Source: Phallusia mammillata
Lineage: Eukaryota
Length of the DNA: 64,000 bases
Assembly: GCA_965637545.1 (NCBI GenBank)
Contig: OZ281500.1
Span: 23,064,001 to 23,128,000 of the forward strand
Reading direction: 5' to 3'
This document shows positions 3,682 to 38,389 of the stretch, in pieces. A program made the translations under genes and the position numbers. Every line of letters begins with the position of its first letter. Position 1 is the stretch's first letter. The notes below the pieces were generated by a model that was not told where the DNA came from, made no database searches, and saw nothing but the letters and a program-made list of their open reading frames with translations.

Positions 3682-6600
3682 ATGATGCTAGCTGTAAGTA
3701 ATTCTACAATGGATGATGCAGTTTTTAGCACTTTGCCTTTCAAAGTAACCTCAACCGCAGTGAACGCCACAAAATGCCAAAACCGAAGGACTCCAGTGTT
3801 TCTGATATTTTCCATTCTACCATCGGTTTCAATGATCATAAACGGCTTTGTTCTCGTGGCTCTGATGTCATACAGGAGCAAGTTACGCCAGAATAACGTC
3901 TATGTGCATGTTGGTAGCACGTTACTGGCTAATATGGCGTTCTCCCTACTGGCTTTCTACCAAATTTTAAGCCTCTATTTCTCGTTGGACGGTCAAAAGA
4001 ATTTGGGCCATGACCACGAAGGCGCAGTAAGAGAAGATGTAAGAGTTTGGTGGTCCTTTTACAGGTAAAAATGCTGATTGCTAAATGTAACTACAGTAAA
4101 CCTCGGTAAATTCGGTTAATTCGGAGAAAAATGTGGTCCAAATGGTTTGTAATGTGGTAAGGCTTTAACTAATCGACATCGGTTAATCCGGATCCTCGCC
4201 TAATCTTGACAAAACTTGAGGTACAAATGATTTGTAATGTGGTAAGGAATAAACGACATGCATTAATCCAGATCTTCGCCTATTTGTTACAATTTTTTGG
4301 TGCAAACGGGTCCGGACTAACCGGGACGACTGACCCAAAGATAGCGTATTCAAGCTGTGCAAATTTAAAATATAACCGGGACGTCAACTCGAAAACACCG
4401 CACGTTTTAACCTTTGTACCCTGCTAATCCATTGTTTTTTAACCCCGGTTTCGTGAAAAGTTATTGTGGGTTCGACCTTCTATTTCATTGTTCCTATTTT
4501 TACTCGATCGATGAAGGTTAAATACGTTTTAGGGCCACAACCCAGAGGTGCACCTTTTTGCGGCCGCGGTGACGAGTTTATGCGGCCGTGAACATGACAA
4601 AGTATCTTTACTGTCGCGCGTCAGCCTTTGTAGAGTCATATGCCACTTTTTGTACGCCTATTTTGTGCAAACAATGCGAAGAAAGAGATACCACAAGCGT
4701 CGCAATATAGTTCGTGACGTTATAAACAGTTAAAATTGATCACCAGACTGTTCAGCTTAATCTGTGCATTAAAGTTAGGAAATAGTCTTGGTATTTCAGG
4801 CCCCCACTAGATAGGTATATATGAAATATACCTATTTATTTACATCAGTACTTTACAAACAAAAACAAGGAGACGCTTGGCGGCAATTGTGCAGCCCTGC
4901 CTTAACACAAAGGTTGAGAAACAAACGCTCAATTTATTATTTCAATATAGTCATGTAAACTAATTGGATTTGATGCATGCACACAGTTTATCATTGAATT
5001 TTTTAAGCCTTGTACTCTTCAGTTTCGATTTTCATTGTCTTACGTGTGTTTATCGCTATCCATTATTACGTCACAGAGCTCTGGTCACCGCCATGTTCCT
5101 TATAATTTGTGGCAACATCGGAATTCTTGTTTCCTCGATCCGGGACACTACTCACGCTCCACTGCTCTTCGGGTCACGTGCTTTGGAGTTGAATTCTTCC
5201 AGTGACTCAACAATGGATGAGGGAAGAAAATTGGCCAAACTTCTTTCTGGTGAGTTCGATAAATAAAAAGAACACAATAGAAAAACCGTAGTTCAACGTC
5301 ATAATCAGGCCTGCCATACGTCCTCTTTTCGAAGGACATGTCCTCCTTTGTAACAAAAAACAAGTTGTCCTCCAAAGACAAGAAAAAGTGCCAATGAATT
5401 TCTGATTTACCAAATACATCTATACATATTCAGCTTATTTTTTACAGAATATACAGGTGGATTTTACATATTTTGAAAATACAAGCTTATTTTAGTGTTG
5501 TGATAATATAAACGTTAAACTTTATCCAAACTATTCTATACCGTCTAATTTCCTAGGCTTTTTTTGGGAGCCCCTAAAGTATTTTTTTCTTTTTAACAAT
5601 GTGTCCTCCTTTTTGGGGATGGAAATATAGTAGGCTGTAATCCCGTCATAATCCCGTGGCTTCCTGAAAACATCGTGCATTTAACTAAAATGACAACTTT
5701 AGTAATAGATCAAAACCATTAACAGCATTTCTTAAACTGACGATCACTGTTTGCCTTTTTAGCTATAATACAGTAAAACCAATCCTTGGTAAAACAGAAC
5801 CAGTCGGTTCAAATAAAGAAATATATATTTCGCCAATGTGGCAGCATCAGTTCCTGGAAATCGAAATACAAATCGATATAAACATAAGTGCGAAAACAAA
5901 CACGCTAAAATAAATAAAAGCAGTAAAACAGTAAAACAAGATATTACTGTTTCAAACGCCGGTAGGTGCCTTTTTCTGCCAGCCGTTGGAATCACCTGCA
6001 TGCGCGTGCCGATATTACTTTTCTTATCTTTATTTTTTCTCCCTTGATTCCGTGCCCAGAGTTGCGCTTGTGTTGTTTGGGTTTTGAGGTTGGTTCAGAT
6101 AGCGTTGACAGTTTGAAACAGTAATATCTTGTTTTAGTGTTTTACTGCTTTTATTTATTTTAGCTTCTTTGTTTTCGCACTCATTTTTATATCGATTTGT
6201 ATTTCGATTTCCAAGAACTGATGATGCCACATTGGCGAAATATATATTCCTTTATTTGAACCGACTGCTTCTGTTTTACAAAGGATTTTATAGTCCGTTG
6301 GTTTAACTGTGTTCTAGGATAAATTTTCAACCACGAGAAAAGTTTAAACGTTTTTCAAAGGCATACGAATATTCCTCTCTTTAAATTTACTTTTGTCGAT
6401 ATATACTACACTGGCCAAAAAAAATCATAAAAACATACAAGCTGCGTGAGGCGTATTTGGTATGTGTCACACCCGATTCAGTTGGATAATGTACATCAAA
6501 CGGTGTAAAATTTGGTGGAAGTGTCAATCATCTTCGTACGTATGCCAGATCATAGGATAACAACACACAGGCGACTGTTTGAATTCAATTCTGCTGATTC

Positions 6601-8948
6601 GCCATATCCTGGGTGTAGCAACCGCGAAACGCAACCAACTGATGTGGTTTTTCGGTTTCCGTAGGTGCAAGATTGATTGACAAACTAGAAAACGCAATCT
6701 AAGCAATCTGTGCAAATTTTAGCGACCACTACTATGTGTGTTTGATAAATCGGGGTAAAAGTTGGGTATAGTAGACGTTATACTGGATAGGGTTTTGAAA
6801 AAGTCTATAAATATACTGCATTTTTTACAGAAATGGTTTCAAAACTGCAGTACGCGAATGCATGGAAATCCCTGTTTAAACGGCTTTGGAAAAAATAACG
6901 TTGTCAAAAATGCACCTGTAAAAAGCAAAACATGCTACTTTTTTTACGTCGTGAGCCAGTATTAGTAAGACACAACAATTATTTTTAAATGCTCCTAAAA
7001 TTGAGTGTTTTCGCAAAGAGAACGCAGTTTGAACGTTATTCCACAATTAGCTGAATGATATAATAAAAAGCAACTTACTGGCTTTGAATCATTCTGAAGT
7101 TTAAACTGATAAACACGAAGAAGTGATTGTGATAAAAAGTCGTTTATGACAAACATCAGTTGAAGACTTTTCGTCGAACTTTCACCATTTACTTTTTTTA
7201 ACTTTATTGTAGGTTTCGATCGTAAACGACGTCATCGTCGCACATGGGTCTTGATCGCCCTCGTGTGGATTCTCCCACTCATCTTTGTTACGAGCGCTCC
7301 TCTTGGATGGAGTTGCGCCTACTCATGCATCTGCTTGTCGGGTTGCTACCCCAGAGATGAGCTTGATTCGCTGGAAAGAAGGGCATGTTCGAGGGTGTGG
7401 CCTCCCATGCGTTACGATTGGTTGGTTGTCAGCATCGGTCTGTGGTTTATCTCAGTGGTTGTCGTTATTGCCATCTTGTGGAGGACCGTGACCGACACAA
7501 AGCGGCATTTCCGCTACTGCAGCATCAGGTCTAGAAAGAGCTATGTTAAAAAATCGTATGTCAGTGTAAATTGGTGCCAAAACACATTATTTTAAATCCA
7601 ATAAAGACTTACAAGAACAAAATGTCAATTAATACTAATTTTATCACTCATCGCTAAGTTTCGTTTTCAGTAAAGCTGCTTTTGTTTGGAAGTTATAGTG
7701 TACCCACGACCAACTTTTCTTTTTTTCCAGGGTCAAAAAAGAAGCCGACCGGCCAACGACCCAAGGTTTAAAGTCAAACGAGGACAAAACTATCTCAGTC
7801 ACAACTCACCTAACTGGCACCGCTGATGACGTTATATCTCCTGTTGTTGACGTAAAAGAAACACGTCACAGATCGCTGATCCGATCCCATCAGGTTCTAG
7901 TGAGTGCCTGCCAGCATGGGGGAAATGGGTTTATAGATGGGTTTATAGGACAGAATACTGTAGTTACGATTGTCAGTCATCTAGCAATCCAGTTTGAATA
8001 ACGTACAGTTGATTTTCGGTTTTTTTTACAAGAATTTACCCAGGATAAATATAATAACTGAAGAAAAACACAAGAACTTAACCTTCCTGATTCAAATTTT
8101 TTAACATAATCATCCGTGAAATATTAAAACTGCCAAAAAAGCTAGATTTTTTAGCCTGCGCTTTGTCACATGGGAATGCTTGGTGACCGGCTGATTCTGT
8201 ATAACGTCTTTAATAAGCCTAAAGTACTGTGATAAAACTGCACAAAAACGAAAAAACTAACCAAATTTTGTCGCGTTTGTATCAATTTTTGTGCATTTTT
8301 AAATAAGACTATTCCCGCCTCTAGCTATTAAAACTGAATTTGCGATTGAAACAAAAATAAAATAGAGTTATGTTCAACAAAAACAGATGTTGTCAGGAGT
8401 CCTCAAATTAGAAGAGTAAGAAAACAAACCAAATGACCCTTAACTTATATCTGCAGCGTCGTACACTGAGCAGTTTAAGGTTTATCATCTGGATCATCGC
8501 GCTGTTCGTCTTCAGTACTGCACCAGTGATGGCATTGATGTTGTACGATTACTTTTCTGTTGAGAACCCAAGCATGGTTCTTGGTAACAGCTGCCTTTGT
8601 GTCACATTTGTCTACTGCTGGGTCTGTCCGTTCTTGCTTGCCAAGTGTCTTCCAGGAATAAGGTCAGTATCTTTTTTGCTGCTCATTGTTTACTTTACTG
8701 TACACAATATTTTTGGTAGACAGACTTTTTGTTACAGTTTTTGTTCAGGGAAAAACTTTGTGCATCATTTTTTGTAATTGGAAACACTGTTTGTTACTAT
8801 TTTTTCTTTGTTTTCAAACATCTTATTTGATATGAACTTTTTTAGACAAGCATTCATTTCTCTGGCGCTGCAAGTGGGCAAAACTGGCAGTAGCAAACGC
8901 AGTGAAATGAAATCTACATCGACCATGAAAAGCAGAAGTGATTTCTAA
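3682..8948 (+). CDS. Divergent class-A-like 7TM receptor (G1), about 449 aa, EDG/cannabinoid-receptor-like features
   Basis: Exons 3682-4064, 5077-5249, 7213-7528, 7731-7899, 8457-8662, 8846-8948 (1350 nt, frame-consistent). Seven hydrophobic segments, N-terminal sequons (NST, NAT), TM1 IING, TM4 VWILP, ECL2 GWSC..CSRVWPP, TM7 CPFLL followed by helix-8-like LPGIR. Confidence 0.88.
4139..4283. repeat. Diverged tandem duplication of about 65 bp in G1 intron 1
   Basis: CAAATG(G/A)TTTGTAATGTGGTAAGG...CGACAT...TTAATCC(G/A)GATC(C/T)TCGCCTA occurs twice about 85 bp apart. Confidence 0.75.
5306..5637. mobile_element. Possible degenerate hAT (Blackjack-like) MITE in G1 intron 2
   Basis: Imperfect ends CAGGCCTGCCATACGTCC / GGAAATATAGTAGGCTG and internal direct repeat TGTCCTCCTTT; TSD not convincing. 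Confidence 0.35.
5781..6287. repeat. Long inverted repeat (foldback): arms 5781-5957 and 6111-6287, 153-bp spacer
   Basis: 177-bp arms, about 10 mismatches and no indels by manual alignment; explains the near-identical ORFs 5838..6047(+) and 6030..6230(-). Confidence 0.92.
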
Positions 8949-12138: not shown

Positions 12139-14665
12139 TCATCTTACAACTGTGCAAAATAGGATTTTTTCGGACAGCATTGCATAAACTGCGCTTCTCA
12201 GATTCGGTAATTTCGTGCAGAGGACCACTGCTGCAAAGGTTTCGCTCAGTGTTGGAATCAGAAAAATTGGCACGGGTCCACGGCCGGGAAAAGCAAATGT
12301 ATTGTAATCGTCTTCGATAATGCAGTAAAGCGTTAAACCGACTATACACCCAGTGCCAATCACATACACCGTTGAGATTATACGCATCCATCCCAACTGT
12401 TGCGAAAGCGCATTTATAAGAAGAAAATTAGAATGTCGCAAGCTAGATTTCCCAGTAAGGTGGCTTAAAGTGTTATCGCGAGGCCCATTGTTTACGTCAT
12501 AACGCTGTTGTTCGATTTCGAATGCTGTCGGTTGTTGTTCGTTTGTCGGGCGGCGTTGAATGGTTGGTATTCTGCTGGCGGCCATCTTTTTCTTTACCAT
12601 AGTAAACTGGATTTGAGACACTATTAGCAGGGAAACCAGGAGAACAGCACATATCAGCCAGATAATGCATCCTAATATCAGGTAGCGATTTGTGATGGGT
12701 GCCCACACAACTGAGCAACCTGCAAAACAAAACATATATTAGTGTTCAGTTCCGTGTGGTTGGCGTACCTTTGTATTTTTAAGCACTTTATCTGGTTTTG
12801 GACAGTTTTGTTTTTCCGGGTAGGCGTACATTTTTGCTTTTTTCATGCTTGTTTTTACCTGAAGCAAGAAATACACTTAGTCTAATTCCATCATTTCAAA
12901 ACACCGTAAGTATTAATTCAAAACGATTTCGGTGACTATCGAAATAAACACGTAAAACATACACAAGCCACAAAACAAAAATTACCTTTGTTACACGTAG
13001 TAACTCTGTCGTTCTGCACAATGTAGTTAAACGTGCATTTGCATTCCCTCGAACACGACTCAAGGGCGACCTCTGTCAGCGAAAATATGATGGGGACGAA
13101 CCACGAAAGCATGATGTGTATCCGCATTTTTCGGCTTTTTGTCGACCAACAAAAACACCTGCATTATAAGTAGAAACCTTTTTTGTGGCGCTAGTTTTAC
13201 AAGTTGCTGGTTGCCTAATTTTTTGTTGTCTTGTCTTACTACCTATGCTTCTGGTTGGGTTTGATAACTGGAAACTCTTAACTGAGTCGCCCGCCTGCAT
13301 GATTGCGAACTGGTCGCGCCTGATGTAGTCCATGATTTGAATCAATAAAATCCAGCAAAAACTGTACATTAATCAGCCCAATAACATTGCTTACTCTGCA
13401 GTTTTATATTTATTTCCAAATTCACAAAAAATCAAATGAAATTTTGTGGCCAATATTGGATACACATCTTTGAGACAGACGTTAACAGTTGATGGTTTCT
13501 GAAAAACTTACTTTGCGAAACCTGATTTCTGCGGGCGTTGTTTTGTTCCACTGCTGTTGGGATTTTCCTCGTCGCTCACGCCTGCCACCGTGCGGTGAAT
13601 TCGGAACGCTTTCGACCGAATGGAGAAAATGACCAGAAATATTCCCCAAGCTATCACTGTATATGACAAAAAATGTGGGCTGCGTCGTTTATGAGTTTAA
13701 TAAATAAAATGTAAACAACAAATAGCCTTATTTGTGACCTAAAAATTCATCTATTTTGTACCAATTCACCATACCTGGATAAAAACGGAAGTAAGATTTT
13801 TCATATGGCAATAATGGTCTGAAACATTTATTACCTCATGAAATGTTGTTACATGAACCTAACATTGGAGGCTTCAAAACAACTTTTTGTGCCTGACACA
13901 AGGCCAACATGAACGCATAATCAAGCCATAATGGGGAAAATTTCGACTACAAACAGGGAGACTTACGTACCGGTATAAGTGGTGACGACGGTTGTTTTTT
14001 GGAAAGTCCACAATTTCAGCAAGGCAGGCGAGTCACCAGGAGGCCCAGTGCTGAGGTAGGACGGTGGCCCGAAACCAAAGTAACTCCATATTGTGTCGAA
14101 ACAACGAAGGACCGTACTTACGGCTATTGCAGCGACTATATTGGCAGCGTATATGTTCACCAGTTGTGATTTAAGCTTCTCCCTGTGAATTGAAATAATA
14201 AACAGTTAATGGGTGGTTATTAAAAGCTTTTTAATTTGTCCAGTAACACCTACCTCTGGTTAGTGTGTAAAAATACCCTGTCGTTAATTTTGTTATACAC
14301 ACAACTAATATTAATGATATACTTGTGGCGTTGGGGCAAAAGGGCCAAGAAGACTGACTTTGGTGGTTGATTTACATGCATTTTAAGGGTCTCAATTTCC
14401 AAAATTCCACCATAACCTAATTAGTGTGTTATACCGAGCACAAATTGCCCTGAACCGACCTGTATACGATCAACGATGTGACAAGGAACAGGTTAATGGG
14501 AGTAGAGCATGAAGTAGCGATGAGTTCAGCAAATAAGTACTCCATCTTCTGCGGCACGCATGTATATACTCGCTGGCTTGCATTCCCCGACAAGTTTGCA
14601 TGTATTGCTGCGGTTGTCCCCGGTGGCCGTGGCCTTGTTGGAACTGCTGTCGGTGTTACGTTCAT
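12139..14665 (-). CDS. Divergent 7TM receptor, tandem paralog A, about 438 aa
   Basis: Exons 14665-14460, 14182-13971, 13656-13512, 13158-12986, 12719-12139 (1317 nt; intron phases 2,1,2,1). Motifs PINLF, YAAN, WTFQK, SIR, SWFVP, CSRECKC..CSVVWAP, LPNLRSAV. Confidence 0.9.
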
Positions 14666-20129: not shown

Positions 20130-23100
20130 TCATTTTCTAAGACATCCAAAGCTCAGAATATACAAGACGACTTCCATCATGGAATGAACAGCAGAACGAA
20201 GGTTAGGAAGTTCCATACAAAGTGCGACGGCCGTGAAGCATTCGGCAGCGGCAGGCATCATTAGAATAACCACCATTAGTTGTTCGTTCCGTTCAAAGAT
20301 CTGCTCGTCATGAGCCAATATGGAGTAAGTTACGAAGCTTACCAGGACACCTGTTCCTATAACATACACAATGGAAATCACAAGGAGTTTGTTGAGATGC
20401 TTTGAGAGTTTGCGGAGCAGCAAACTGCTGTGCTTGGTGGAATGACGGAACATAATCCATCTTTTGATTCTCCACGATTTATTCCGATCCGTATTAGCAT
20501 TACTTTCCACGTCTTCTGAAGCTGGCTCCGATTCCCGTGTTTCCTGTTCGTCCCGCTGTTCTGCGTATTCCCTAGTTTCATTTTCCGGATTTTCGTTTTC
20601 CCTAATTTCCCTTCTAAAATTTCCCGGCATTTCCACATTGTCACATTCGGACCGTTCCGACGGAAAGACGTCTTTGAATCCCATTCCGTCGTCCCGGTTA
20701 TTAATAGGTGGAATATTAGTGGACATGATCTGCTTGCTGACTCGATTAAAGTCAATGTTGGACTTTGTGAGAAGGAAGAGTAGGATGATGACAAAGACGA
20801 ACCAGCAGAAACATCCGACCAGCAAGGATGAGTTTGGGAGAGGAGGCCAAATGAGGGAGCAAGCTGAAAGATAAAGCATTAAAAAATTAGCTGGGATGAA
20901 AACATTCATGTTGAAATCAGCCCTAAAGCATTCATTTCGACCAGCGACACTTATCGGTAAATCATAGTACGCCAGGGCTATTAAAGGCGTAATAGCGGAT
21001 TTGAAAATTATGTTTGATTTCTATTTTGATTTTCTAAAAATCGTTGCAAAGTTAATTTTTGTTTTGTTAGCGGAACGTAAGGCCCAGCAAATGGCCGTGT
21101 GGACACAAGGCCTTGCCATATGGTGGTGAATGCTTGGTGACCGGCTGATTCGGTATGGCGCCTTTATGGGCCTGGCGTACTGTGATTTAGGTAACAATAT
21201 GTTGTACGAACGCAACTTACTGTCTCCGCACGCCGGGATCGATCTATTGGAGGGAATGTAATTGAAGATGCACTTGCATTTGGCCAGACACGTTTTGTCG
21301 ATGCTGATTGCAATGATCGACGATGTGATAGGAATTGCCCACGAGATGAATATTAAGATTAGTGCCTGTTGTTTTCGATGCTTTGAAAACCAATCGGCCA
21401 ATCTGTAATGCAAATATTTAAAGCGTTAAAACTGTTTATGCAAAACTTCAAACCGTTTCATGGAGGGTCTAACACAATGGTTCCTAACCGAACGGAGTTT
21501 TGAAACTTGAGAGGAGGAATTTACTTTAACTTTTACATGTAGTTTGTAAATAGACACTTAAGCTCTGGGAATACGACCTGTGAAGTTGATAAAAGACCCA
21601 ATTTTGACATAGTTCATCACAATGTGGCGTTACGTTTAAACCAACTGGCCGGAAGCCCTTTTCCAATGTTTATCCTCGATGACAAATAAATCCTAACAAA
21701 AATGATGTGGTGTTCCATAGGCTTTGGGAATATTTGACTAGAATTTTTACGTTTAACGGCTAAAAAATGTTTATCACTTTTAGCAACGTTTTTTCCGACT
21801 TTCAAAAAATTACGCAGAAAATTGGACTAACTGCGGTTAAACTTTTGGCGTTTCCTATTTTATCTTCCGCTGTGAAATGGTTTGCGGTGATAATCTCAGC
21901 ATTACAGTCGCGAACACGACAGTAAACAATAAACGTTATTGTTTCGTGTTGTTATAGGTTACAGCAGCGGCTCCCAAACTGGGGTCCGCGGTCCTTTAGG
22001 GGTCCGTGAGGCAATTTTGGGGGGGCCGCGAAGCAGTTGAAGTAATTCTATAATCTTATTTGGCGTCAGTTTGTGCCACTAAATAAGTTTAAATCAAAGT
22101 AGAATTGATAATCGACTGTCTCCATTGCTGAACAATGGCCTTTATTGAATGACAACTATCAAAAATGCAATTGTTCGCGCACAATCGTAATGTTTTTTGT
22201 CCTGTTTGTGATGTCACATGCTGTCTTTGGATGATTGTTATGCGCAATTTTGCATTACTAGCTAAAATCCTGCAATCAACTTTCGTTTTTATGAAATACA
22301 CATGGATACAAGTCATTATTACATTGGTTTGCTTCCTTTAAAAAAGCGATTGCTTGCACTATAACTTAGTGATTTTATTGATGTGTTAAGCCGCCTTTGC
22401 TTATATTGCTATGCGCAATCTTATGAGGCCAAGGAAAACTTCTACATGCTGTTGTGATGAATACAAATGTTGACTTTTGGGAACCAGTAACCTAGATATT
22501 GGTGTCGTTAACAACAGTTTTGTTTTGGATAACCAACTTTAAGATCATCAATTGAATAAACAAACTTGTATAACCTGTTACTCTTTTTCTCACGGTCCTT
22601 CAACTCTTCTTCGTGACCGACCCCAGCAACTGTTCTGTGAACGCGAAATAGATTTTCACGAAGCGCCATGATCACGAACGCGATTCCTCCAGTGATAACT
22701 GCAGAAAGGCCAATATAGTTACCGTACATTCATGTTGTACAGTACCAAGTCTGCTGAATCATTTTTTATTTCATTTTTTCGACCAAGGAAGTTGGTGATT
22801 TCAATTTGTTTCAATCCACCACTTCCTCGGATTCAGAGAAAAAATTAAAACGCTCGTCTTAAAAAAAATCATTTGGAATATTCAGTTATATTACTTTGGT
22901 CAAAAAACACTTCTACGTGTCTCTCAGGTGGAAAGTCTAATATCATTACACCAGAACTTGAGAACAAAATAACCTTCGATTTCTGGTGAATAATTTGTAG
23001 GAGTTTGGGACAGTTTTTTGTCCAACCGTTATAAATTTACGAATTACCCGCATTTTATGTTTTACTGGGAGCTGTTTTTCGTTAAAAACTTGCAATTCAG

Positions 23101-23900
23101 CTAATATTTCCCCAAACTGCACAATGGGCATCATCAGAGCGATAAAGCGGACTCGTTGCGAACAAATGTCTGTAGTAAAATGAAACATTCAACTTACCGA
23201 CATACATTGTTACCACTAAGGACTTGTGGTAAAGCCACAGCAATTGCAGGACGTATGGCGCAGTCATGCAGTAAGGGTAAACAGTTTTACCCCCAATCAT
23301 ACCGAATAACGACCACGTAGTGTCGCTCAAGCGTATGACGGCGTTAAAGAAAACCGCCACAACCAGATTTGCCGCGTAAATGTTCACCAGCTGAGTTCGA
23401 AGTTTATGTCTGCAAAATAAGTTGATTGCGAAGTTCGTTTCCTCTAGTCTTGGTTATAAATGCAAGTTTGCATTTTTAGTTTTTTTCGTGCTTGAGTTTA
23501 TAGCATAAAGATCAAAAATTTTCGTGTATATACTTGTGATCAAAATATGATGTCTGAAGGGGAAAACGTAATTTTTATGTTCGTTTCTGCTAGTTTGGGA
23601 ATTATTACAAGTGGACTTTCGGTGTTCACGAGCCTTTGGTTGTAATAATTATACAGCCATCTATTTCTATAAATAATTGTTGCTTCTATCAGGAAAAACT
23701 GGATTTGACTGTACAAGTTTTGGTTTTGTTCTTGATTCAATATATATTATATTCAAACAGTTGTACCTGAAAACGACGAGTGACACGGTTAGAAAGAAGT
23801 TGATTGGCAGTGCAAAGCAAGCCACAATCATTTCGGCGTAAATAAACATCCAGTTTTCTGTCACACACGTCATAGGTGCGGCGGTGGTGCAGGTGTTCAT
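20130..23900 (-). CDS. Divergent 7TM receptor, tandem paralog B, about 464 aa, long acidic ICL3
   Basis: Exons 23900-23767, 23409-23198, 22698-22566 (an alternative in-frame donor would end the exon at 22575), 21402-21221, 20863-20130; same phases as A and exon 2 again 212 nt. Motifs PINFF, YAAN, WLYHK, ALR, SWAIP, CLAKCKC..CSLIWPP, LPNLRSAV. Confidence 0.9.
20960..21187. mobile_element. Small TA-flanked inverted-repeat element (AATCAYAGTACGCC family), 228 bp, in receptor B intron 4
   Basis: Imperfect arms of about 40 bp: AATCATAGTACGCCAGGGCTATTAAAGGCG versus CGCCTTTATGGGCCTGGCGTACTGTGATT, TA on both flanks. Partial copies at about 8173-8235 and about 61134-61172. Confidence 0.6.
21965..22040. 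mobile_element. hAT MITE end fragment in receptor B intron 3
   Basis: CAGCGGCTCCCAAACTGGGGTCCGCGG..GGGGGCCGCGAA resembles Charlie-type termini; a possible decayed partner end TTTGGGAACCAG lies near 22476-22487; no TSD seen. Confidence 0.45.
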
Positions 23901-31095: not shown

Positions 31096-31174
31096 ATTGC
31101 CACAACCCTTAAAACTGTAACCAGACGAACTGTTTTTGTGATTGACACAACCCTTAAAACTGTAACCAGACGAA
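31096..31174. repeat. Tandem duplication, period 45 bp
   Basis: ATTG(C/A)CACAACCCTTAAAACTGTAACCAGACGAA at 31096 and 31141. Confidence 0.9.
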
Positions 31175-32337: not shown

Positions 32338-32775
32338 CAACGACACAATCAACAAGCATAGGGGCAAGAGTGCATTTGTAGGAGATGCTGCAGAACAAAA
32401 CAAAATGAGAAAAGTAATTTTGAACAGAAACAAAACAACGAATGAATCTTCTCAATATACAATGTTGGTTTACAAATGAATAAAATCGAACAGTTGTGTT
32501 ACTCTAACAATTGTTTGTTCCATTAAGTTAAAACATTAACATTCCTGGTAGTTTTGTTGGTTAAGTGCCACAGTGTCGGTTATAAACGCGTAAACAAACA
32601 TAAACTAAAATTTCAATATTCTTAGTGTAACTCGAATTGAAATTGGATTTAGTTGCAGTTAAATAAAACAAAGAAGTTTTGACGATGAAACAATATTGCA
32701 CAAATGTAGTTAGAAAAACACAACAAAACTTAGTTTAGAGTTCTCGCATGGGATGCTTCAAACAAACGTCTTAAC

Positions 32776-35700
32776 CTAACGGAGCGTGAAGAGGCACGGG
32801 CACACTGCTGTCAAAATGGAACGAAGCGTTGCCTTGATTGCGCTGGAAATGGGATGAATGCAAACGCACAAAAGAATGGACGAAATGGTTTCGACAACAT
32901 TTGGCAAATTGATGAAAACCAATTTCGGATAAAACGAGTCAGGCTGTCTGTAAAATCCCGTCGCGGTGTCGATGAACACAAACAGTATTGAAGTCATAGT
33001 GCCGCCGACGTACACAATAGAAACAATAAAAATCGCTAGAAGGTCTCGTTTTGTTTTTTCCAGCAGCAAGCTTCCAGTCCTATGCTGCTTGGTTCGGTCG
33101 GGTTCCGCGAACGGAGTATCCCCCGGCGTTTCCACGGAGTTTTCCCGGGAAACGTGGAACACGTGGACACTGTGCTGCTGCAGCTCGGCACTGATTCGAC
33201 GGAGGTCGACGTATGACCGCACGAGGGCACCGATGAGCGCGAACAGCGAAATCAAACACAAGGCAGTGCTGATGTAAACTGTGTGGTTGGCCAGGGGCGC
33301 AACATCGTGGGCACATCTGCCTGTAACAGATAAATGTTAAAGTTTTTGACATTGTTATTTTACCAAATGTGGTAAAATAAGTGTTATCTGGCAAATAAAG
33401 CATAAGTTGCAAAAATCATATGAGATAAATCCAGAAGCGTAATTGCAAACGAAAAATAACAATAATAAATGTTTAAAGACAATTCTTAGTACCATCTCTG
33501 CAATTATTTGGCAAAAGTACTATCTTGGCAATTATCAAACAGGATAAATGCAAGTATAATGTGGTAATTGAAGCAACAAATACGAAACTCATATAGGCCC
33601 AGACAGGTCATTTAAAGCTACGAAACAAAAATGCCTGTCCAAAGTGACATTTCTTACTACCGTCATGACAGTTACTCAGAGTAATATCGCGTGTACCACA
33701 GGACTTAATGAGAATTGTAAGCCATTCATTGTTTAAGTGTTGGAACCAGGAGTCTCTATTGACACAAGTTCTGGGTATCATGTGATGCTTAAACTTACTG
33801 CCTAAATCCTCAGCTACACCAGTACTTGGAACGTAATCGAACGGACACTTGTAAATATGGGAACAGTTGTCGGCCGTGATGCTGATCAGAATGATAAGAA
33901 TTGGGAAGAACCATGAGAGGAAGATCAGGATCCTGGCTTTTGAGCGTTCCGACAATTCCTTAAATCTGTTGGAAACAAAAAATGTTTTTTTGGACCAAGA
34001 TTTTTTTCATTGACTGGATATACATTTAGAAGACATAAGATGAGAAATCATCTAACATCCCCATTTTCTCAAATGTTTCCTACTAAAGGCAAAAACCGAA
34101 GTCAAACTAATAAAGGCAAGCAAAACTCTATTAGGCCTGGTGCATTGCGATTTATACACGAAAATACTGTTATTATTGGCCAGATTCGAAATTGTAAGGC
34201 TTTTTCAAGCGATAAATACTTGTTTTTAGCTCCATGTAAAAAACCTGCGCAAAAAATCGATAACATCGTACATAACGTGTTTTGTTAACTCTAATTAAGT
34301 AGTTAAGTCGTCATTGTATTATCGAACGTGCAGGTAAAAGTTTTCTTAACATTCCTGTACGAGTTGGTGGTTGTTTCTTCTGGCAAGAACCTTTTACTGC
34401 ATCTAAACTTACTTGACAAGTATCCAGGGCAGTCGTGTGACCTTGTTTGACTGATTTTCCCCTCTCAAGCTGAGGCCAGCCACTGTTCCACTAATCCTCA
34501 TTAGGTTCTTTCGCATTGCCATGATGATCATCACGATACTCCAATAAAACACTGGAAAACAGCAAGTTTTCTGGTAAAATGTGACAGTTGCGTTTTTAAG
34601 CCTGCTTTAAACTAGAGCGACCGAGTGCTTGGTTGGTTTGAGGGTAACTTTTGCCTTTTGCAACTCTCTCGCTTGCGCCGTTACGTGACTGCAGTGTACT
34701 GATGTAACTGATCATCACGATACTTAATAAAACACTGGAAAACAACAAGTTTTCTTGCAAAAGTTGGAACTTTATGATTTGTAGGGAGTTTCTTTGATGA
34801 AGTCTGCTTTGAAGTAGAGAGGTTAAGCGGTCAGTTAGTTCAGGGGTAATAACTTTGCCTCTGCAAACTGACTCTCTTGCGCTTGTACGTGGCTGCAGTG
34901 TACCGCACGTGACGCTAGAGGGGTTGATTCTACAAAATCTTTTGCATACACAAATGAACAAAGATACACATAAAAAAAGCATTTTGGTTTGAATCACGTT
35001 AAAAAACATGACAGTGATGAATCACTTATTGACAGAAAATATTTTCATCACAGAGTTAAAAAAATTATCCAAAGAACCCCCTTATATGCGTAATGCGTGT
35101 TTTAAAATGCTTATTGGCACACATATAAAATATTTTGTTCTGGTAGCATTGATTGTCGTTTCACCTGGGTCAACTGCAAATTTGATTTTTTTTTCTTCAC
35201 GTCAAAAGCATGCTATTTTTGCTTAGTATTGCAAGTCACAAGTTCACAGCCTGGTGCAACAAAAGCCTACAATGCCAAGGTTGTATAAATGCATGCTGGC
35301 TTAATTTGTGAGTATAACGTAGACGTTGCGTGTTACTGCCAATCAACATCACATTGTCTTAAGCCGAGGTTAAAAATGACGTCAAAGGGACCATTTTGTC
35401 AGCGATTTTCCGAGCAGACGAGTTGATGTCCTGTATTTGACTCCGCTTGAATTGATTTAGCGCACTTTTGACCTTGAGGCAGAAAGCTAATTATTACGTA
35501 TACAGGTCCCGCAATAGTAAGGAAATTAAATGTGCAATTCCTTGGTTTATTTTAAGAGCACGTTTGAATTAAATGTGAAAATGTGTTTTATTTGTGAGTG
35601 AAATGAACGTGACTGTAAATAAGAGGTAAACTGTTACGCAAAAAAGAAAAACTGAACATAATACATGCAAAAAATTGAAAGAATTCAAACTGGTCTTATA

Positions 35701-38389
35701 CACTTGACAATCAAACTGTCGGGTACATTGCCCTGTAGTTACAATAATAGAAATCAATCCAGACATTAGTAAGTTGTCAAACCCTTCTGTTAGTTTTGTT
35801 TCACCTGATGAAACGTTGATGTTCTATACACAAATATTAACTTGTATTATTTGGCCGAGAATATTTAGAACCGTGTGTTTTGAACCCGCCCACATTTAGA
35901 CATATATTAAATAAACCCTTAAAGACAAACAAAAAACCAAGCACTTTACCTAAGAACAGCATCACGAGTGTTGACTTTTCGAACGCCCACCAATAAAGAT
36001 ATCCGTCTGAATGTTGATTGTCGGACGGAAACTCGCTTCCTAAGTAAGGTTTGCCGAAGTTTTGTGAAAACGTGTCGTAGACTCTAATCGCAGATGCTAC
36101 AGTGCTCGCTAAAACCACGTTTAACCCGTAAAGGCAAACGACTCGGGCCAATAGACGTTTCCTGTGGAAATATTTGATTACTAGATTTAGATATGACGGA
36201 CTTCCTTTTCAAGGTTTAAGGGTACTAGGAAATATGTGTAACTGTTACACAGTATACGTGCGTACTTTGAAATGGTTTCGTTTCTGAGAAATGATTGTTT
36301 GTTTTTCCTTACGGTGGATTGGCTGATTTAACGTTTTAGTGATAAGATGGCAATGGTTTTATGGTAGCTTCGTTCAAATACCTTGAACATGCTTTGACTG
36401 TAAAACAAATTGATTTTTGTGAAATATTTTCTCAAAAAAAAAACGATTGTGTAATGATGATGCCTACAATTGTTGTCAAAATAAACCGAAAATAATACGG
36501 GACAAAGTTTAATGGTTTATTATTCCCATAAGTACGAATATGGTGCGAGATATCTTAAACCTTTATCAGCTTAGTGGTCACTGCCCCCTTTACCTTTTAG
36601 AAGTTGTTGTATCACGGATTAGTTTTGTCGAAACGTTTTGGGTGATAAACTCATTGTCTTTTCAACGACCATTTCTTCTAAGTTAAATTTTGGAACATGG
36701 AAATTATGGTAGGATAGGTTTCAAATCAGATGGCTTTATGTAGTTGAAGCTTAATTTAGTTTTGCGAACTGGACGAAAACTAGCTGACGTTGCGATAATC
36801 GGAAGCAAGATTTTAATTGGAGACCTTCCATTGACGTTTGGAAACACAAAACTTGTTTACAAACAACATTACATGATTTCAATTGATCCTAAGAAAAGTT
36901 ATCTTCGCCCTATTGCTTGCTCATTAATTATTTAGTCGTCAAATGGCTTCTTATTAGCAATGAACCAAAAACTGTCAAAGTCTTGGTTTTTGCATCTGAA
37001 TTCTACTAAAGAAACTTTCCACAAAAACACGTTAATTTGCATTTTTTTTCATTTTTATTTAATTGTAAAATCTTGTGGGATGTTTGTCTGGCCACGTGTT
37101 TCTGGTTAGTTTATCACTCAATGCCATCGAAATCGAAACTTGTTGTCTTAGAGAGCATTGAAAAACACAATCACTTAAAGTGCACCATGGGCACCAGATT
37201 CATCTTTATGAGCGCATTGGGTTATATGGGTCTATGGAAAACTCCCTTTTTGCCCCTTTTGTGCCGTCGCCCTTGCTGATCACCGCAGATAAACATTTAA
37301 TTTTTGAACGAACGATTTGTTGTTTTGCTTTATGTTTTAGTGTCATTACATTGATCTTTAACGTTGCGCAATTGTTTCCAGCTGGGTGATTGCTTAATGC
37401 AGTTGTGTCACTATGTTTTTCAAGCAAGTGAACTAAGCTTAACTTTAAGGCCTGTTAACTTAATGTCGTGAAACTTTATACCACCGCATTGCCAACTCTG
37501 TGGAAGTTGTTATTGTTACGTTGCAATGTGACGTCATAAACGGCGTAATGACAAATGTATTAACGTCGCGGAGACAAATGGATTTGCTGTAATGTTCAGT
37601 GATGGACATATCTGTCACGGAAGGTGAATTGCCTCCTGCGGGTTTATCTTCTCATCTGACCGCATCCATCTAAACTAGCCCTTCCTTACCCTATTTAAGG
37701 CTTGTATAGAAATTCATCCACAAGCAATTACCTCAAACTCTTTTGACTGACTAAAAGTTGTACATTTCTCCAAACAAACATGGGTGTAGCGTGTAGCCTA
37801 AAAAGGAGAAGAGATACAAGAGCTATTCTTTGTTGTCTATTCTAAAATATTCTTTGTTGTCAGATAAAGGTGTAATGATTTACTTAAAAAGATTTAAGCA
37901 TTAACTAATAATGCCCTGTAAATTAGGAGCAACTTATCTGAATCAGTGTGTTTCAACCAATGTGGCGCAGCACAAAAAATCGTAGTGTTAGAAGTCCAAC
38001 TATTATCGTAATAACAAAATTCGGGTGGGTATGTTATCACCAAAGTGATTTTGATCGTATTTGTTGGTAAAAACAGTTTGATCCAGTCATCAAAAGTTGC
38101 AAGTTAATTTCTTGGGTTGGTTTTATTTTTGTTTTATACCTGGAAAAATTTGTTACGCGAACAAAAATGTATGATTGGTCAGTGTGTTGTAACCGTACAA
38201 TACTAATCCAAATCAACAAATACATCTTAATTGATGCTCTTACCTCTGGAAAACCAGACAAACCAGAAGAAAAACGTTGATCGGGAAAAGTATGATGGCC
38301 AAAACGGCCTGGACTTGCAAACTTGAGGCGTGCGGTCCGGCGCTCTTTAGCACGCAAGTCATATTCGAGGACGAATTCATTCCGCTCAT
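32776..38389 (-). CDS. Divergent 7TM receptor, tandem paralog D, about 402 aa
   Basis: Exons 38389-38244, 36161-35950, 34551-34413, 33965-33799, 33320-32776 (1209 nt); same phases and exon 2 again 212 nt. Exons 1 and 3 are not in the supplied ORF track and were found by homology (FPINVFLLVCLVFQR; MAMRKNLMRISGTVAG). Confidence 0.88.
34527..34903. repeat. Local duplications in receptor D intron 2, including a second copy of the exon-3 splice acceptor
   Basis: About 47-bp block 34527-34575 repeated at 34709-34756; about 60-bp block 34641-34700 repeated at 34843-34903. Confidence 0.8.

What the first reader, a model, noticed from the sequence alone, without database searches (positions are those of the whole stretch)
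3682..38389. Clustered family of four orphan 7TM receptors with an EDG/cannabinoid-type ligand pocket: candidate lipid-sensing or chemosensory receptor expansion
Seen: in all four reconstructed proteins a Lys/Arg lies exactly 22 residues before the TM3 arginine (G1 WWSFYR..SSIR; A WTFQK..FSIR; B WLYHK..MALR; D WWAFEK..MAMR), i.e. position 3.28 if that Arg is 3.50. None has the Cys at the top of TM3 or a TM5 proline, and ECL2 ends in CS-x-x-W-x-P (CAHDVAP in D; GWSC at its start in G1). Established: R3.28 of S1P1/LPA1 and K3.28 of CB1 contact lipid head groups, and the MECA group lacks the TM3-ECL2 disulfide; EDG and cannabinoid receptors also lack P5.50 and have GW-x-C..CS in ECL2. Inference: this is a lineage-expanded, fast-diverging branch of MECA-type receptors. 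Tunicates are reported to lack vertebrate-type odorant receptor genes, so such a family is a candidate for sensing anionic lipids or other environmental cues.
Basis: partly seen in the sequence, partly recalled or inferred. Interest (0 to 1): 0.82.

Follow-up and report, generated by a model that had tools for sequence, protein, structure and literature searches.

The report
Tunicate cannabinoid-like receptor gene cluster
Four neighbouring genes in this sea-squirt window encode very diverged seven-helix receptors from a tunicate-only expansion (about two dozen genes) of the cannabinoid / lysophospholipid receptor lineage; what they bind is unknown.

Summary
The window carries four intact, GT-AG-spliced paralogous 7TM genes: G1 on the + strand, A, B and D on the - strand. 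Each has K/R exactly 22 residues before the TM3 Arg, no Cys at the top of TM3, no TM5 Pro, and an ECL2 ending CS-x-x-W-x-P (CAHDVAP in D). G1 needs two more exons than a simple reading gives: it has 6 exons, encodes 449 aa and ends at 8948. RNA contigs confirm three of its joins.

The MECA-type reading is supported. A G1-like profile hits only CB1 (5e-8), then S1P receptors and LPA1, among all solved structures. Profile-profile comparison links the family to tunicate cannabinoid-receptor orthologues at 97-99% probability, against 2-35% for other class A genes of the same genome. AF2 models of the Clavelina relatives match CB1, LPA1, S1PR and GPR3/6 best. A five-Cys ECL2 scaffold is shared with the Ciona CB-receptor orthologue. 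The G1 + A-like + A-like gene order is the same in Clavelina.

The lipid-pocket inference is not supported. The "3.28" basic residue is E, Q, N or A in Clavelina paralogues and absent from the CB-like relatives, and the 3.50 register is uncertain by 1-2 residues. A, B and D lack D2.50, DRY, CWxP and NPxxY. Ligand and chemosensory role remain untested.

The parts
3682..8948 (+). Gene G1, 6 exons (3682-4064, 5077-5249, 7213-7528, 7731-7899, 8457-8662, 8846-8948), 449 aa. It is the most conserved and most class-A-like member.
   Evidence: Splice sites and frame. RNA contig joints 4064|5077, 5249|7213 and 7899|8457, and a loose end at 8662 matching 8846. 60% identical to Clavelina LOC143454626 (P0010), with matching intron positions. 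The 7528|7731 join is inferred only, from phase and orthologue.
12139..14665 (-). Gene A, 5 exons (14665-14460, 14182-13971, 13656-13512, 13158-12986, 12719-12139), 438 aa.
   Evidence: Intron positions are identical to Clavelina P0013/P0014. One run (X1) holds 9% of the words of this stretch; the joins were not checked with reads.
20130..23900 (-). Gene B, 5 exons (23900-23767, 23409-23198, 22698-22575, 21402-21221, 20863-20130), 461 aa. It is sister to A (40-42% identity).
32776..38389 (-). Gene D, 5 exons (38389-38244, 36161-35950, 34551-34413, 33965-33820, 33320-32776), 395 aa. It is the most diverged of the three.
4063..5143 (+). G1 TM3. The R128 codon is split by intron 1 (4063-4064 + 5077). 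The TM3-end R150 lies at 5141-5143, with a spacing of 22.
   Evidence: the join is confirmed by RNA contigs.
13616..13998 (-). A TM3: K131 (13998-13996) and R153 (13618-13616), spacing 22 across intron 2.
22658..23225 (-). B TM3: K107 (23225-23223) and R129 (22660-22658), spacing 22 across intron 2.
34511..35977 (-). D TM3: K111 (35977-35975) and R133 (34513-34511), spacing 22 across intron 2.
7305..7406 (+). G1 Cys-rich ECL2, from GWSC-x4-C-x-C (7305-7334) to CSRVWPP (7386-7406).
   Evidence: Aligns with LGWNC and CSTILP of S1PR3 and with CB1.
12697..13061 (-). A ECL2: C-x3-C-x-C (13061-13035) and CSVVWAP (12717-12697), split by intron 4.
20841..21296 (-). B ECL2: C-x3-C-x-C (21296-21270) and CSLIWPP (20861-20841), split by intron 4.
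33295..33871 (-). D ECL2: C-x5-C (33871-33845) and CAHDVAP (33315-33295), split by intron 4.

Best explanation
The window holds a conserved tandem cluster of four intact genes for highly diverged class A (rhodopsin-type) 7TM receptors. They belong to a tunicate-specific radiation of the cannabinoid / EDG (MECA) receptor lineage, the same radiation that contains the orthologue of the Ciona cannabinoid receptor CiCBR.

Shown:
- The gene structures.
- The paralogy of the four genes.
- The specific homology to tunicate CB-like receptors and, through the G1 subgroup, to human CB1, then S1P receptors, then LPA1.
- A class A fold for the Clavelina relatives.
- A shared ECL2 built on five conserved cysteines and ending C[SH]-x4-P.
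- Conserved synteny with Clavelina.
- About 24 clade members in this genome.

Inferred mechanism:
- A hydrophobic or amphipathic ligand binds in a 7TM pocket roofed by a disulfide-stapled ECL2, as in CB1, S1P1 and LPA1. These receptors also lack the TM3-ECL2 disulfide and P5.50.
- In the window's four proteins, the K/R near the top of TM3 may contact a polar or anionic group.
- Signalling is probably non-canonical. G1 keeps N1.50, the TM3 Arg, W4.50, P6.50 and P7.50, but has N at 2.50, no acidic 3.49 and no Y7.53. A, B and D additionally lack CWxP and NPxxY and carry a conserved Glu in TM7.
- All four have an unusually long ICL2 of about 45 residues. In the model of the G1 orthologue it is a helical TM3-TM4 extension, and it is nearly invariant between G1 and its Clavelina orthologue. 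It is a likely effector-binding surface.
For: Gene models and joins.

Paralogy:
- phmmer 1e-8 to 1e-80.
- hhalign of A/B/D-like against G1: 99.6-99.9%.

Link to class A and the CB lineage:
- G1 exon 3 finds, genome-wide, canonical 7tm_1 genes with the same ECL2. These include L048 (CWLP, NPLIY) and L053. L053 is 60% identical to Ciona 'cannabinoid receptor 1 isoform X1'.
- Across CB-like, P0027-like, G1-like and A/B/D-like proteins, three Cys and the final Pro are invariant columns and one further Cys is nearly invariant.
- The G1-like profile against 177,635 PDB sequences gives CB1 at 4.8e-8 to 2e-6 (16 constructs), S1PR1/2/3/5 at 1e-4 to 7e-3 and LPA1 at 0.025-0.1. Nothing else is significant.
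- Control: the canonical paralogue P0027 gives beta2-adrenoceptor first, so a CB1-first ranking is not generic.

hhalign:
- Whole family against CB-like: 97-99% (E 3e-11 / 8e-16). Against ten other class A ORFs of the same genome: 2-17%.
- A/B/D-like alone against CB-like: 96-98%. Against the other class A ORFs: 8-35%.

Structure:
- AF2 of P0010: pLDDT 78, pTM 0.80. The top 30 Foldseek hits are all LPA1, CB1, S1PR or CB2.
- AF2 of P0013, with an alignment holding no CB-like rows: pLDDT 76. Foldseek ranks CB1, LPA1, A2A and S1PR first. VIA-align gives GPR6 Z 25.7, CB2 24.7 and GPR3 24.6.
- The ESM Atlas structure search puts an LPA receptor 2a cluster first.

Tree: one branch (96/91) separates ten other class A ORFs from CB-like + G1 + A/B/D.

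Synteny: in Clavelina OX392439.1 the G1 orthologue (+) is followed by P0014 (-) and P0013 (-).

R3.28 as a head-group contact in LPA1 and S1PR1: PMC4542628.
Against: - Pfam 7tm_1 does not reach its cut-off for any family member. P0010 scores 22.4 against 30.5 bits; the A/B/D-like proteins and the window exons give no hit.
- The A/B/D-like profile alone has no significant PDB hit. The best are OX2R 0.012, 5-HT2C 0.018 and CB1 0.12. Its MECA placement therefore rests on G1, on the tunicate CB-like proteins and on predicted structures.
- No vertebrate, amphioxus or echinoderm reference sequences could be brought into a tree. The tree used only ten unnamed class A ORFs as outgroup and has long branches.
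- The canonical clade member P0027 scores beta2-adrenoceptor above CB1, so the clade as a whole is alpha-group, and its MECA placement is less secure than for the G1 subgroup.
- Structures were predicted for Clavelina relatives, not for the window's own spliced proteins.
- The basic residue is not conserved across the family.
- The TM3 Arg is Thr in two Clavelina members.
- Most activation microswitches are missing, so receptor function itself is an inference.
Confidence: 0.75

Rival explanations
1. A, B and D (and possibly G1) are atypical 7TM proteins. They keep the receptor fold but no longer couple to G proteins. They would act as decoys or scavengers, as scaffolds or co-receptors, or through the extended ICL2.
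For: - A, B and D lack D2.50, an acidic 3.49, CWxP, NPxxY and Y7.53. G1 has N2.50 and CPFLL in place of NPxxY.
- The TM3 Arg is Thr in two Clavelina members.
- ICL2 is about 45 residues in all four and is modelled as a helical hairpin in P0010.
- Pfam 7tm_1 fails for every member.
Against: - Intact ORFs, conserved intron positions and conserved synteny across tunicate orders imply selection.
- N1.50, the TM3 Arg and W4.50 are kept in the window's four proteins.
- A conserved TM7 Glu could replace D2.50.
- Many diverged chemoreceptor-type class A families signal without canonical motifs (general knowledge).
- No functional data point either way.
Confidence: 0.25
2. The clade is the ascidian chemosensory repertoire. 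Its members detect external lipids or other environmental cues and stand in for the missing vertebrate-type odorant receptors.
For: - About two dozen clade members in this genome, several in tandem arrays: this window, and five genes at C7:8.13-8.16 Mb.
- Lineage-specific duplications: A+B here, and 7+20 and 13+14 in Clavelina.
- Fast divergence of A, B and D.
- A variable residue at the putative pocket position (K/E/Q/N/A).
- Ciona lacks OR, TAS2R and insect- or nematode-type chemoreceptors (PMC2396169).
Against: - No data on where the genes are expressed.
- Two dozen genes is small for a chemosensory repertoire.
- G1 is a slowly evolving one-to-one orthologue (60% identity), which suits an endogenous ligand.
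- The genome holds much larger 7tm_1 expansions elsewhere that are equally good candidates.
- CiCBR itself is neuronal and axonal (PMC7924210).
Confidence: 0.12
3. The genes are class A receptors of another alpha-group or peptide lineage, and the EDG/CB-like ECL2 and missing C3.25/P5.50 are convergent.
For: - P0027, a canonical member of the same ECL2 clade, scores beta2-adrenoceptor above CB1.
- The A/B/D-like profile's best (non-significant) PDB hits are OX2R and 5-HT2C.
- VIA-align Z values differ little between MECA and dopamine receptors (25.7 against about 23).
Against: - The G1-like profile hits CB1, S1PR and LPA1 only, and the best-scoring stretch is TM6-TM7, not ECL2.
- hhalign specificity for CB-like over other class A genes.
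- Foldseek ranking for two independent models.
- The L053 relative is annotated as, and is 60% identical to, the Ciona cannabinoid receptor.
Confidence: 0.08
4. A, B and D are decaying duplicates (pseudogenes) of a G1-like receptor.
For: - Loss of nearly all class A motifs.
- Low identity to any relative.
- Little RNA evidence: only a 9% word share in one run for A.
Against: - Each gene has a complete ORF across five exons, with canonical splice sites and no frameshift or internal stop.
- The same exon structure, and intact ORFs, are seen in Clavelina and Styela relatives.
- Family-specific conserved motifs persist: W before the K/R, TVAG after TM3, YV-x-G-T-G in TM6, Glu in TM7 and LPNLRSAV in helix 8.
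Confidence: 0.03

Closest known systems
Tunicate cannabinoid receptor orthologue (CiCBR; NCBI 'cannabinoid receptor 1 isoform X1', Ciona intestinalis, P0004) and its orthologue in this genome (G000 C6:8.438 Mb, L053)
   Same: - Class A fold.
- ECL2 starts GW[NS]C, then C-x-C, a fourth Cys and a final C[SH]-x4-P.
- No P5.50.
- hhalign 97-99% to the window family.
- Same side of the 96/91 branch in the tree.
   Different: - CiCBR-type proteins keep GN, LAxAD, DRY/DRH, the TM6 Pro, NPxxY and a short ICL2, and they pass Pfam 7tm_1 (6e-25).
- The window proteins have lost most of these motifs and have a 45-residue ICL2.
- They carry W-x3-[KR] at the top of TM3, where the CB-like proteins have no basic residue.
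- Identity is only 14-18%.
Human CB1, and CB2
   Same: - Only significant PDB family for the G1-like profile, at 4.8e-8. The match covers TM4 + GWNC and TM6-TM7.
- Top Foldseek and VIA-align matches.
- No C3.25 and no P5.50.
- A basic residue near the top of TM3 (K3.28 in CB1; own knowledge).
   Different: - 13-16% identity.
- CB1 has two ECL2 cysteines; the tunicate clade has five.
- CB1 has DRY, CWxP and NPxxY.
- No ligand data exist for the tunicate proteins.
EDG-type lysophospholipid receptors (S1PR1-5, LPAR1-3)
   Same: - Second and third best PDB families for the G1-like profile.
- LGWNC and CS-x3-P align with G1 ECL2.
- Top structural matches.
- R3.28 contacts the phosphate head group in LPA1 and S1PR1 (PMC4542628).
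   Different: - EDG receptors have W3.25-x-x-R3.28 followed by E/Q3.29 (own knowledge). Here the Trp is four residues before the K/R, and no 3.29 partner is conserved.
- The basic residue is not conserved across the tunicate family.
GPR3/GPR6/GPR12 (constitutively active MECA orphans)
   Same: Best VIA-align Z scores for the A/B/D-like model: GPR6 25.7 and GPR3 24.6. They are orphan lipid-pocket receptors.
   Different: The Z margin over other alpha-group receptors is small (under 3). No sequence-level signal was seen.
Ciona 'Unclassified EDG/CNR-like' and 'Other Rhodopsins' of Kamesh et al. 2008 (PMC2396169)
   Same: Ascidian-specific or fast-evolving rhodopsin-family receptors without clear orthologues outside tunicates. 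This is the category the window genes would fall into.
   Different: That survey lists one EDG/CNR-like gene and 23 unplaced receptors for Ciona. It does not describe a CB-like radiation, the five-Cys ECL2 or motif-less members. I did not map the window genes onto its gene list.

Membership tests
Class A (rhodopsin-family) GPCR, Pfam PF00001 7tm_1 | Score above the Pfam gathering threshold (30.5 bits). | tested here: not met
   Window exons give no hit at E<=1. The full-length G1 orthologue P0010 scores 22.4 bits (E 1e-4). The A/B/D-like proteins P0007, P0013, P0014, P0017 and P0020 give no hit. The window's own spliced proteins could not be submitted because they have no reference.
Class A (rhodopsin-family) GPCR | Significant sequence or profile homology to bona fide class A receptors. 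| tested here: met
   - G1-like profile against PDB: CB1 4.8e-8.
- G1 against P0027 (7tm_1 at 2.8e-31): phmmer 1.4e-10.
- Family against tunicate CB-like receptors: hhalign 97-99%.
- For A/B/D-like alone, the link runs only through G1 and CB-like; the direct PDB search is not significant.
Class A (rhodopsin-family) GPCR | Seven-helix bundle plus helix 8 that superposes on solved class A receptors. | tested here: met
   AF2 models of the Clavelina relatives P0010 (pTM 0.80) and P0013 (pTM 0.74). Foldseek E 4e-8 and 3e-6, probability 1.00. VIA-align Z up to 25.7 over about 300 residues. These are proxies for the window proteins: 60% identity for G1 and 24-28% for A/B/D.
Class A (rhodopsin-family) GPCR | Conserved microswitches: N1.50, D2.50, D/E-R-Y, W4.50, CWxP, NPxxY. 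| tested here: not met
   - N1.50 and W4.50 are kept in all four.
- 2.50 is N in G1 and I/V/S in A/B/D.
- Only the Arg of DRY is kept (SIR, SIR, ALR, AMR).
- P6.50 and P7.50 are present only in G1 (STAP, CPFLL).
- Y7.53 is absent in all four.
MECA cluster, EDG / cannabinoid / GPR3-6-12 branch | No C3.25 (no TM3-ECL2 disulfide) and no P5.50. | tested here: met
   Read directly from the spliced proteins. The residue at '3.25' is S/T/L/A, and TM5 has no Pro.
MECA cluster, EDG / cannabinoid / GPR3-6-12 branch | ECL2 signature GWNC ... CS-x3-P with intraloop cysteines. | tested here: met
   G1 has GWSC ... CSRVWPP, aligned by HMMER to LGWNC and CSTILP of S1PR3 and to CB1. A, B and D keep the cysteines and C[SA]-x4-P but have lost GW. 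Disulfide pairing was not tested.
MECA cluster, EDG / cannabinoid / GPR3-6-12 branch | Closest solved or known receptors are MECA members rather than other class A groups. | tested here: met
   The PDB profile search, Foldseek on two models, VIA-align and the ESM Atlas structure search all agree. A control with P0027 gives another order.
MECA cluster, EDG / cannabinoid / GPR3-6-12 branch | Placement inside MECA in a phylogeny with named vertebrate and invertebrate references. | tested here: inconclusive
   Only a tree with tunicate CB-like proteins and ten unnamed class A ORFs of this genome could be built. A 96/91 branch puts CB-like + G1 + A/B/D on one side.
Lysophospholipid / cannabinoid-type ligand pocket | A conserved basic residue at 3.28 lining the pocket and contacting the ligand head group. 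| tested here: inconclusive
   - K/R lies 22 residues before the TM3 Arg in G1, P0010, A, B, D and Styela P0017.
- The same position is E, Q, N or A in Clavelina P0007, P0020, P0013 and P0014, and is not basic in CB-like P0004, P0002 and P0027.
- The register of the TM3 Arg against R3.50 is ambiguous by 1-2 residues.
- Side-chain direction could not be read, because model coordinates are not exposed.
Chemosensory receptor repertoire | Expression in sensory cells; large, rapidly turning-over tandem arrays. | not tested
   Arrays and lineage-specific duplications exist, but no tissue-resolved expression data were available. RNA runs are coded and small.

The most novel reading that the evidence does not exclude
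Ascidians have turned the single ancestral cannabinoid/EDG-type receptor lineage into a repertoire of about two dozen Cys-knotted-ECL2 receptors. The motif-less members (A/B/D type) signal through a new intracellular module: a long helical ICL2 and a TM7 Glu in place of D2.50/NPxxY. They would serve as the animals' lipid or chemical-cue sensors in place of odorant receptors.
Probability: 0.12. Interest if true: 0.8.

Novelty: new variant of a known kind. Interest (0 to 1): 0.5.

Why it matters
- Cannabinoid-receptor evolution is usually told with one invertebrate-chordate orthologue (CiCBR or BfCBR). Here that orthologue sits inside a tunicate radiation of roughly two dozen genes, recognisable by a five-cysteine ECL2.
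- The radiation grades from canonical receptors to proteins that have lost almost every class A activation motif, yet are kept intact and syntenic across ascidian orders.
- This gives a natural series for asking how a lipid-type class A receptor can be rebuilt.
- It flags family members that Pfam-based GPCR surveys miss.
- It offers concrete orphan targets (G1 first, because it is conserved and transcribed) for deorphanisation in a model chordate clade.
- It does not yet say anything about ligand or physiology.

Tried and rejected
1. Pfam on single exons gave nothing useful.
2. Word-index protein search with B exon 5 and with P0010 returned no relatives, so that index does not reach this family.
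3. PDB searches with the TM5-7 profile of A/B/D plus G1 exon 4 and with single G1 exons found nothing significant. G1 exon 3 and P0010 alone gave only sub-threshold S1PR3 and CB1 hits.
4. hhalign of the four window proteins against ten intronless class A ORFs gave 3.8%. Before the CB-like relatives were found, this looked like evidence against a GPCR.
5. My first G1 model had 4 exons and 409 aa. It was wrong in ICL3 and at the C-terminus, and was replaced after the RNA contigs and the Clavelina orthologue. One search also contained a failed motif look-up, corrected.
6. A non-GPCR 7TM family was rejected.
7. No further family members lie in the window outside the four genes.
Clavelina relatives served as proxies, and the window proteins were analysed only in scripts.
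9. The direction of the K/R side chain could not be checked, because no coordinates are returned.
10. The search of earlier findings returned nothing for this place or topic.

Full report
WHAT IS IN THE WINDOW

The window is AT-rich eukaryotic DNA (GC 0.32-0.42) without N runs. Six-frame reading and codon-level inspection of every junction give four genes whose exons join only at GT-AG sites, stay in frame and end in stops.

- G1 (+ strand): 3682-4064, 5077-5249, 7213-7528, 7731-7899, 8457-8662, 8846-8948; 449 aa.
- A (- strand): 14665-14460, 14182-13971, 13656-13512, 13158-12986, 12719-12139; 438 aa.
- B (- strand): 23900-23767, 23409-23198, 22698-22575, 21402-21221, 20863-20130; 461 aa.
- D (- strand): 38389-38244, 36161-35950, 34551-34413, 33965-33820, 33320-32776; 395 aa.

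A, B and D share one five-exon plan with intron phases 2,1,2,1. A family HMM finds every one of these exons and nothing else in the 64 kb.

INDEPENDENT SUPPORT FOR THE JOINS

- Contigs of four small public runs of the same organism were laid on 3600-8800. The runs are labelled RNA by guess only.
- They carry the G1 joints 4064|5077 and 5249|7213 (two runs) and 7899|8457 (one run), all GT..AG.
- One contig leaves the genome at 8662 and continues with letters that I found at 8846.
- This showed that my first four-exon G1 model was incomplete, as is any reading that runs exon 3 or exon 5 on to the next stop. G1 has an extra ICL3 exon (7731-7899) and a separate last exon (8846-8948).
- The 7528|7731 join is not covered by contigs. 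It rests on matching phase and on the orthologue.
- The annotated Clavelina lepadiformis genes found later have introns at the same protein positions: four of five for G1, and all four for A/B/D.
- For gene A, one run holds 9% of the sampled words. The A, B and D joins were not tested with reads, because the single read-laying run went to G1.

THE OBSERVATION

- A basic residue lies exactly 22 residues before the Arg that ends TM3: R128/R150 in G1, K131/R153 in A, K107/R129 in B and K111/R133 in D. A conserved Trp sits four residues before it.
- There is no Cys near the top of TM3 and no Pro in TM5.
- ECL2 ends CSRVWPP, CSVVWAP, CSLIWPP and CAHDVAP, and GWSC opens ECL2 in G1.
- The four proteins are true paralogues. 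phmmer gives A-B 1e-79, A/B-D about 1e-30, G1-A/B about 1e-16 and G1-D 1e-8. hhalign of A/B/D-like against G1 gives 99.6-99.9%. The shared features are therefore inherited, not four independent coincidences.

Two qualifications apply.

- Calling the position 3.28 assumes that the TM3 Arg is R3.50. Against the DRY/DRH of the tunicate CB-like receptors, MAFFT places it under D3.49 and hhalign two positions upstream of R3.50, in a poorly aligned helix. The numbering is therefore uncertain by one or two residues, which is a 100-200 degree turn of the helix.
- The basic residue is not a family constant. It is R in the Clavelina G1 orthologue and K in a Styela relative. It is E, Q, N and A in the four Clavelina A/B/D-like proteins, and it is not basic in the CB-like relatives. 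The TM3 Arg itself is Thr in two Clavelina members.

WHAT FAMILY

Sequence pieces alone were uninformative.

- Pfam found nothing.
- The word-index search found nothing.
- PDB searches found nothing significant.
- An early profile comparison with ten intronless class A ORFs of this genome gave 3.8%.

Two searches opened the family.

The exhaustive profile search with TM5-TM7 found 23 relatives.

- The named ones are all tunicate: five Clavelina lepadiformis genes and one Styela clava gene.
- They are annotated 'uncharacterized protein' or, in UniProt, 'G-protein coupled receptors family 1 profile domain-containing protein'.
- One of them, LOC143454626 (P0010), is the orthologue of G1 (phmmer 3e-151; 59-60% identity).

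A six-frame search of the window's own 240-Mb genome with G1 exon 3 (TM4-ECL2-TM5) found a graded series of relatives.

- These include genes with canonical CWLP and NPLIY, and a gene with GN, LAVAD, DRY and GWNC.
- The latter is 60% identical to Ciona intestinalis 'cannabinoid receptor 1 isoform X1' and 65% identical to a Clavelina protein.

An alignment of TM4-ECL2-TM5 from CB-like, P0027-like, G1-like and A/B/D-like proteins has three Cys and the final Pro as invariant columns and one further Cys nearly invariant. With that profile, the genome gives 34 exon matches at E<=0.01, which I count as about 24 genes. They include another tandem array of five at C7:8.13-8.16 Mb.

TESTS OF THE MECA ASSIGNMENT

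(a) PDB profile search.
- A profile of the G1 subgroup against all 177,635 PDB sequences hits CB1 at 4.8e-8 to 2e-6 (16 constructs), then S1PR3/1/5/2 at 1e-4 to 7e-3, then LPA1 at 0.025-0.1. Nothing else is significant.
- The best-scoring stretch is TM6-TM7, not only the ECL2 motif.
- As a control, the canonical clade member P0027 ranks beta2-adrenoceptor first, with A3, CB1 and LPA1 behind. A CB1-first list is therefore not what any tunicate class A protein gives.

(b) Profile-profile comparison in one script, with controls.
- Family of ten against seven tunicate CB-like proteins: 97.2% local and 98.8% global (E 3e-11 / 8e-16).
- The same family against ten other class A ORFs of this genome: 2-17%.
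- A/B/D-like alone: 96-98% against 8-35%.
- G1 pair: 96-97% against 29-68%.
- CB-like against other class A: 99.4-99.8%, as expected for canonical receptors.

(c) Structure.
- AlphaFold2 of P0010 gives pLDDT 78 and pTM 0.80, with seven helices plus helix 8.
- Its top 30 Foldseek PDB hits are all LPA1, CB1, S1PR1/3/5 or CB2 (E 4e-8 to 8e-7). A2A and 5-HT1A follow.
- AlphaFold2 of the A/B/D-like P0013 used an alignment that contains no CB-like rows. It gives pLDDT 76 and pTM 0.74.
- Foldseek ranks CB1, LPA1, A2A, S1PR1/3, GPR6 and CB2 first for it.
- The structure-only re-alignment gives GPR6 Z 25.7, CB2 24.7 and GPR3 24.6. The margin over dopamine receptors is small, at about 23.
- The ESM Atlas's own model of P0013 is nearest to an LPA receptor 2a cluster.

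(d) Tree. An ML tree of 23 proteins has one branch (96/91) separating ten other class A ORFs from CB-like + G1 + A/B/D. G1 + A/B/D is supported at 100/100, and A and B are sisters. The outgroup is small and unnamed and the branches are long, so this is supporting evidence only.

(e) Direct A/B/D signal. The A/B/D-like profile by itself has no significant PDB hit: OX2R 0.012, 5-HT2C 0.018, CB1 0.12. Pfam 7tm_1 stays below threshold for every member. The placement of A, B and D is therefore transitive.

SYNTENY AND TEMPO

- On Clavelina chromosome record OX392439.1, the G1 orthologue (+) is followed by two A/B/D-like genes on the opposite strand (P0014, P0013). This is the same order and orientation as G1, A and B here. 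The cluster predates the split of these ascidians.
- G1 is about as conserved (60%) as the CB orthologue (65%). A, B and D are 22-29% identical to their Clavelina relatives, and they duplicated independently in each lineage.

HOW IT PROBABLY WORKS

Shown: a class A-type fold, and a cysteine-rich ECL2 inherited from CB-like ancestors.

Inferred:
- As in CB1, S1P1 and LPA1, which also lack the TM3-ECL2 disulfide and P5.50, a stapled ECL2 roofs a hydrophobic pocket suited to lipid-like ligands.
- The K/R near the top of TM3 could contact a polar head group in the window's four proteins, as R3.28 does in LPA1 and S1PR1 (PMC4542628).
- Its replacement by E, Q, N or A in close relatives means it cannot be a family-wide anionic-lipid anchor. 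At most it is a variable specificity site.

The intracellular half is unusual.
- G1 has N at 2.50, I-R-D instead of D-R-Y, S-T-A-P instead of C-W-x-P and C-P-F-L-L instead of N-P-x-x-Y.
- A, B and D lack the TM6 and TM7 prolines altogether and carry a conserved TM7 Glu.
- All four have an ICL2 of about 45 residues. In the P0010 model, TM3 (113-164) and TM4 (167-205) continue as a helical hairpin into the cytoplasm. The G1 ICL2 sequence is almost unchanged between the two species.
- I therefore expect non-canonical coupling, possibly through ICL2. I give a quarter probability that A, B and D do not couple to G proteins at all.

COMPARISON AND NOVELTY

- CiCBR is known as the ascidian cannabinoid-receptor orthologue, with neuronal expression and unknown pharmacology (PMC7924210).
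- The Ciona GPCR survey lists 5 MECA genes, one 'unclassified EDG/CNR-like' gene, 23 unplaced 'Other Rhodopsins' and no odorant receptors (PMC2396169).
- The window genes are best described as a new variant within that known kind. They are the derived end of a CB-like radiation marked by a five-Cys ECL2, and its members escape Pfam. I found no paper describing this radiation, but the literature library is partial.
- The chemosensory idea is not excluded, but it has no direct support. This genome also has much larger 7tm_1 expansions elsewhere.

LIMITS

- Spliced window proteins have no reference, so they could not be sent to Pfam, AlphaFold or the large searches. Clavelina relatives stood in for them.
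- No vertebrate reference sequences could be loaded for a tree.
- Model coordinates are not exposed, so the pocket geometry and disulfide pairing are untested.
- The runs used for splicing are only guessed to be RNA. However, GT..AG-bounded skips of 1.0, 2.0 and 0.56 kb at the predicted sites are what spliced transcripts give.

Noticed in passing
window 4135-4295 (G1 intron 1): A roughly 85-bp-period satellite-like repeat. The first look found 1738 candidates genome-wide, with tandem arrays at e.g. C4:668 kb, C4:3.544 Mb and C4:4.372 Mb at 80-87% identity. It has very high contig depth in the RNA-guessed runs (up to about 1000 in X18), with 'goes back' joints typical of a repeat.
   Followed up: partly
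window 31886-32341: A tandem repeat of period 27/54 bp with about 17 copies at 75-83% match. It produces long spurious ORFs on both strands (31842-32084 +, 31878-32348 -).
   Followed up: partly
window 34727-34741 and flanks (D intron 2): A degenerate duplicate of the acceptor region and first codons of D exon 3 lies 183 bp upstream of the real exon (34551). It is followed by stops and looks like a small tandem duplication remnant.
   Followed up: partly
window 40536-40910 (-) and 59747-60088 (+): Two inverted copies of a similar ORF-like repeat. Their translations share stretches such as ...FCL.G.VYKK..SP.L..LL.NY.CCFVSLRS..Y.SCQ... It is probably an interspersed element.
   Followed up: no
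window 7486 (G1 exon 3): Contigs of two runs (X15, X16) covering exon 3 both stop at 7486, which is 42 nt before the inferred donor at 7528. A GT lies at 7488-7489. This could be an alternative donor or a heterozygous site; it is not resolved.
   Followed up: no
window 5012-5690 (G1 exon 2 into intron 2): Contigs of X17 and X18 run through the exon 2 donor into the intron, so they derive from unspliced RNA or DNA in these runs. One contig skips 5372-5541 without splice signals (CC..AC), which looks like an indel polymorphism.
   Followed up: no
G000 C7:8133136-8157055: A second tandem array of about five genes carries the same five-Cys ECL2 scaffold, also with an intron inside ECL2. Further single members lie at C4:13.55, C4:13.98, C4:21.30, C5:3.67, C5:16.20, C6:6.35/6.36, C6:9.66, C6:11.63, C7:2.89, C7:9.05, C8:2.04, C8:12.97 and C8:17.08 Mb.
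   Followed up: partly
G000 C1:5.33-5.73 Mb, C1:9.60-9.75 Mb, C7:0.65-0.69 Mb and others: Large expansions of canonical 7tm_1 genes: intronless ORFs of about 490 aa, and ORFs of about 1000-1250 aa carrying a 7tm_1 domain. At least 239 exon-level matches were scored out of 730 candidates. These are alternative candidates for a chemosensory repertoire.
   Followed up: no
L055 (Clavelina OX392439.1:24369996-24392401): Upstream of the Clavelina G1 orthologue lie an LDLa + 7tm_1 receptor gene (948 aa) and a fatty-acid hydroxylase family gene. Whether the same neighbours flank this window's left edge was not checked.
   Followed up: no
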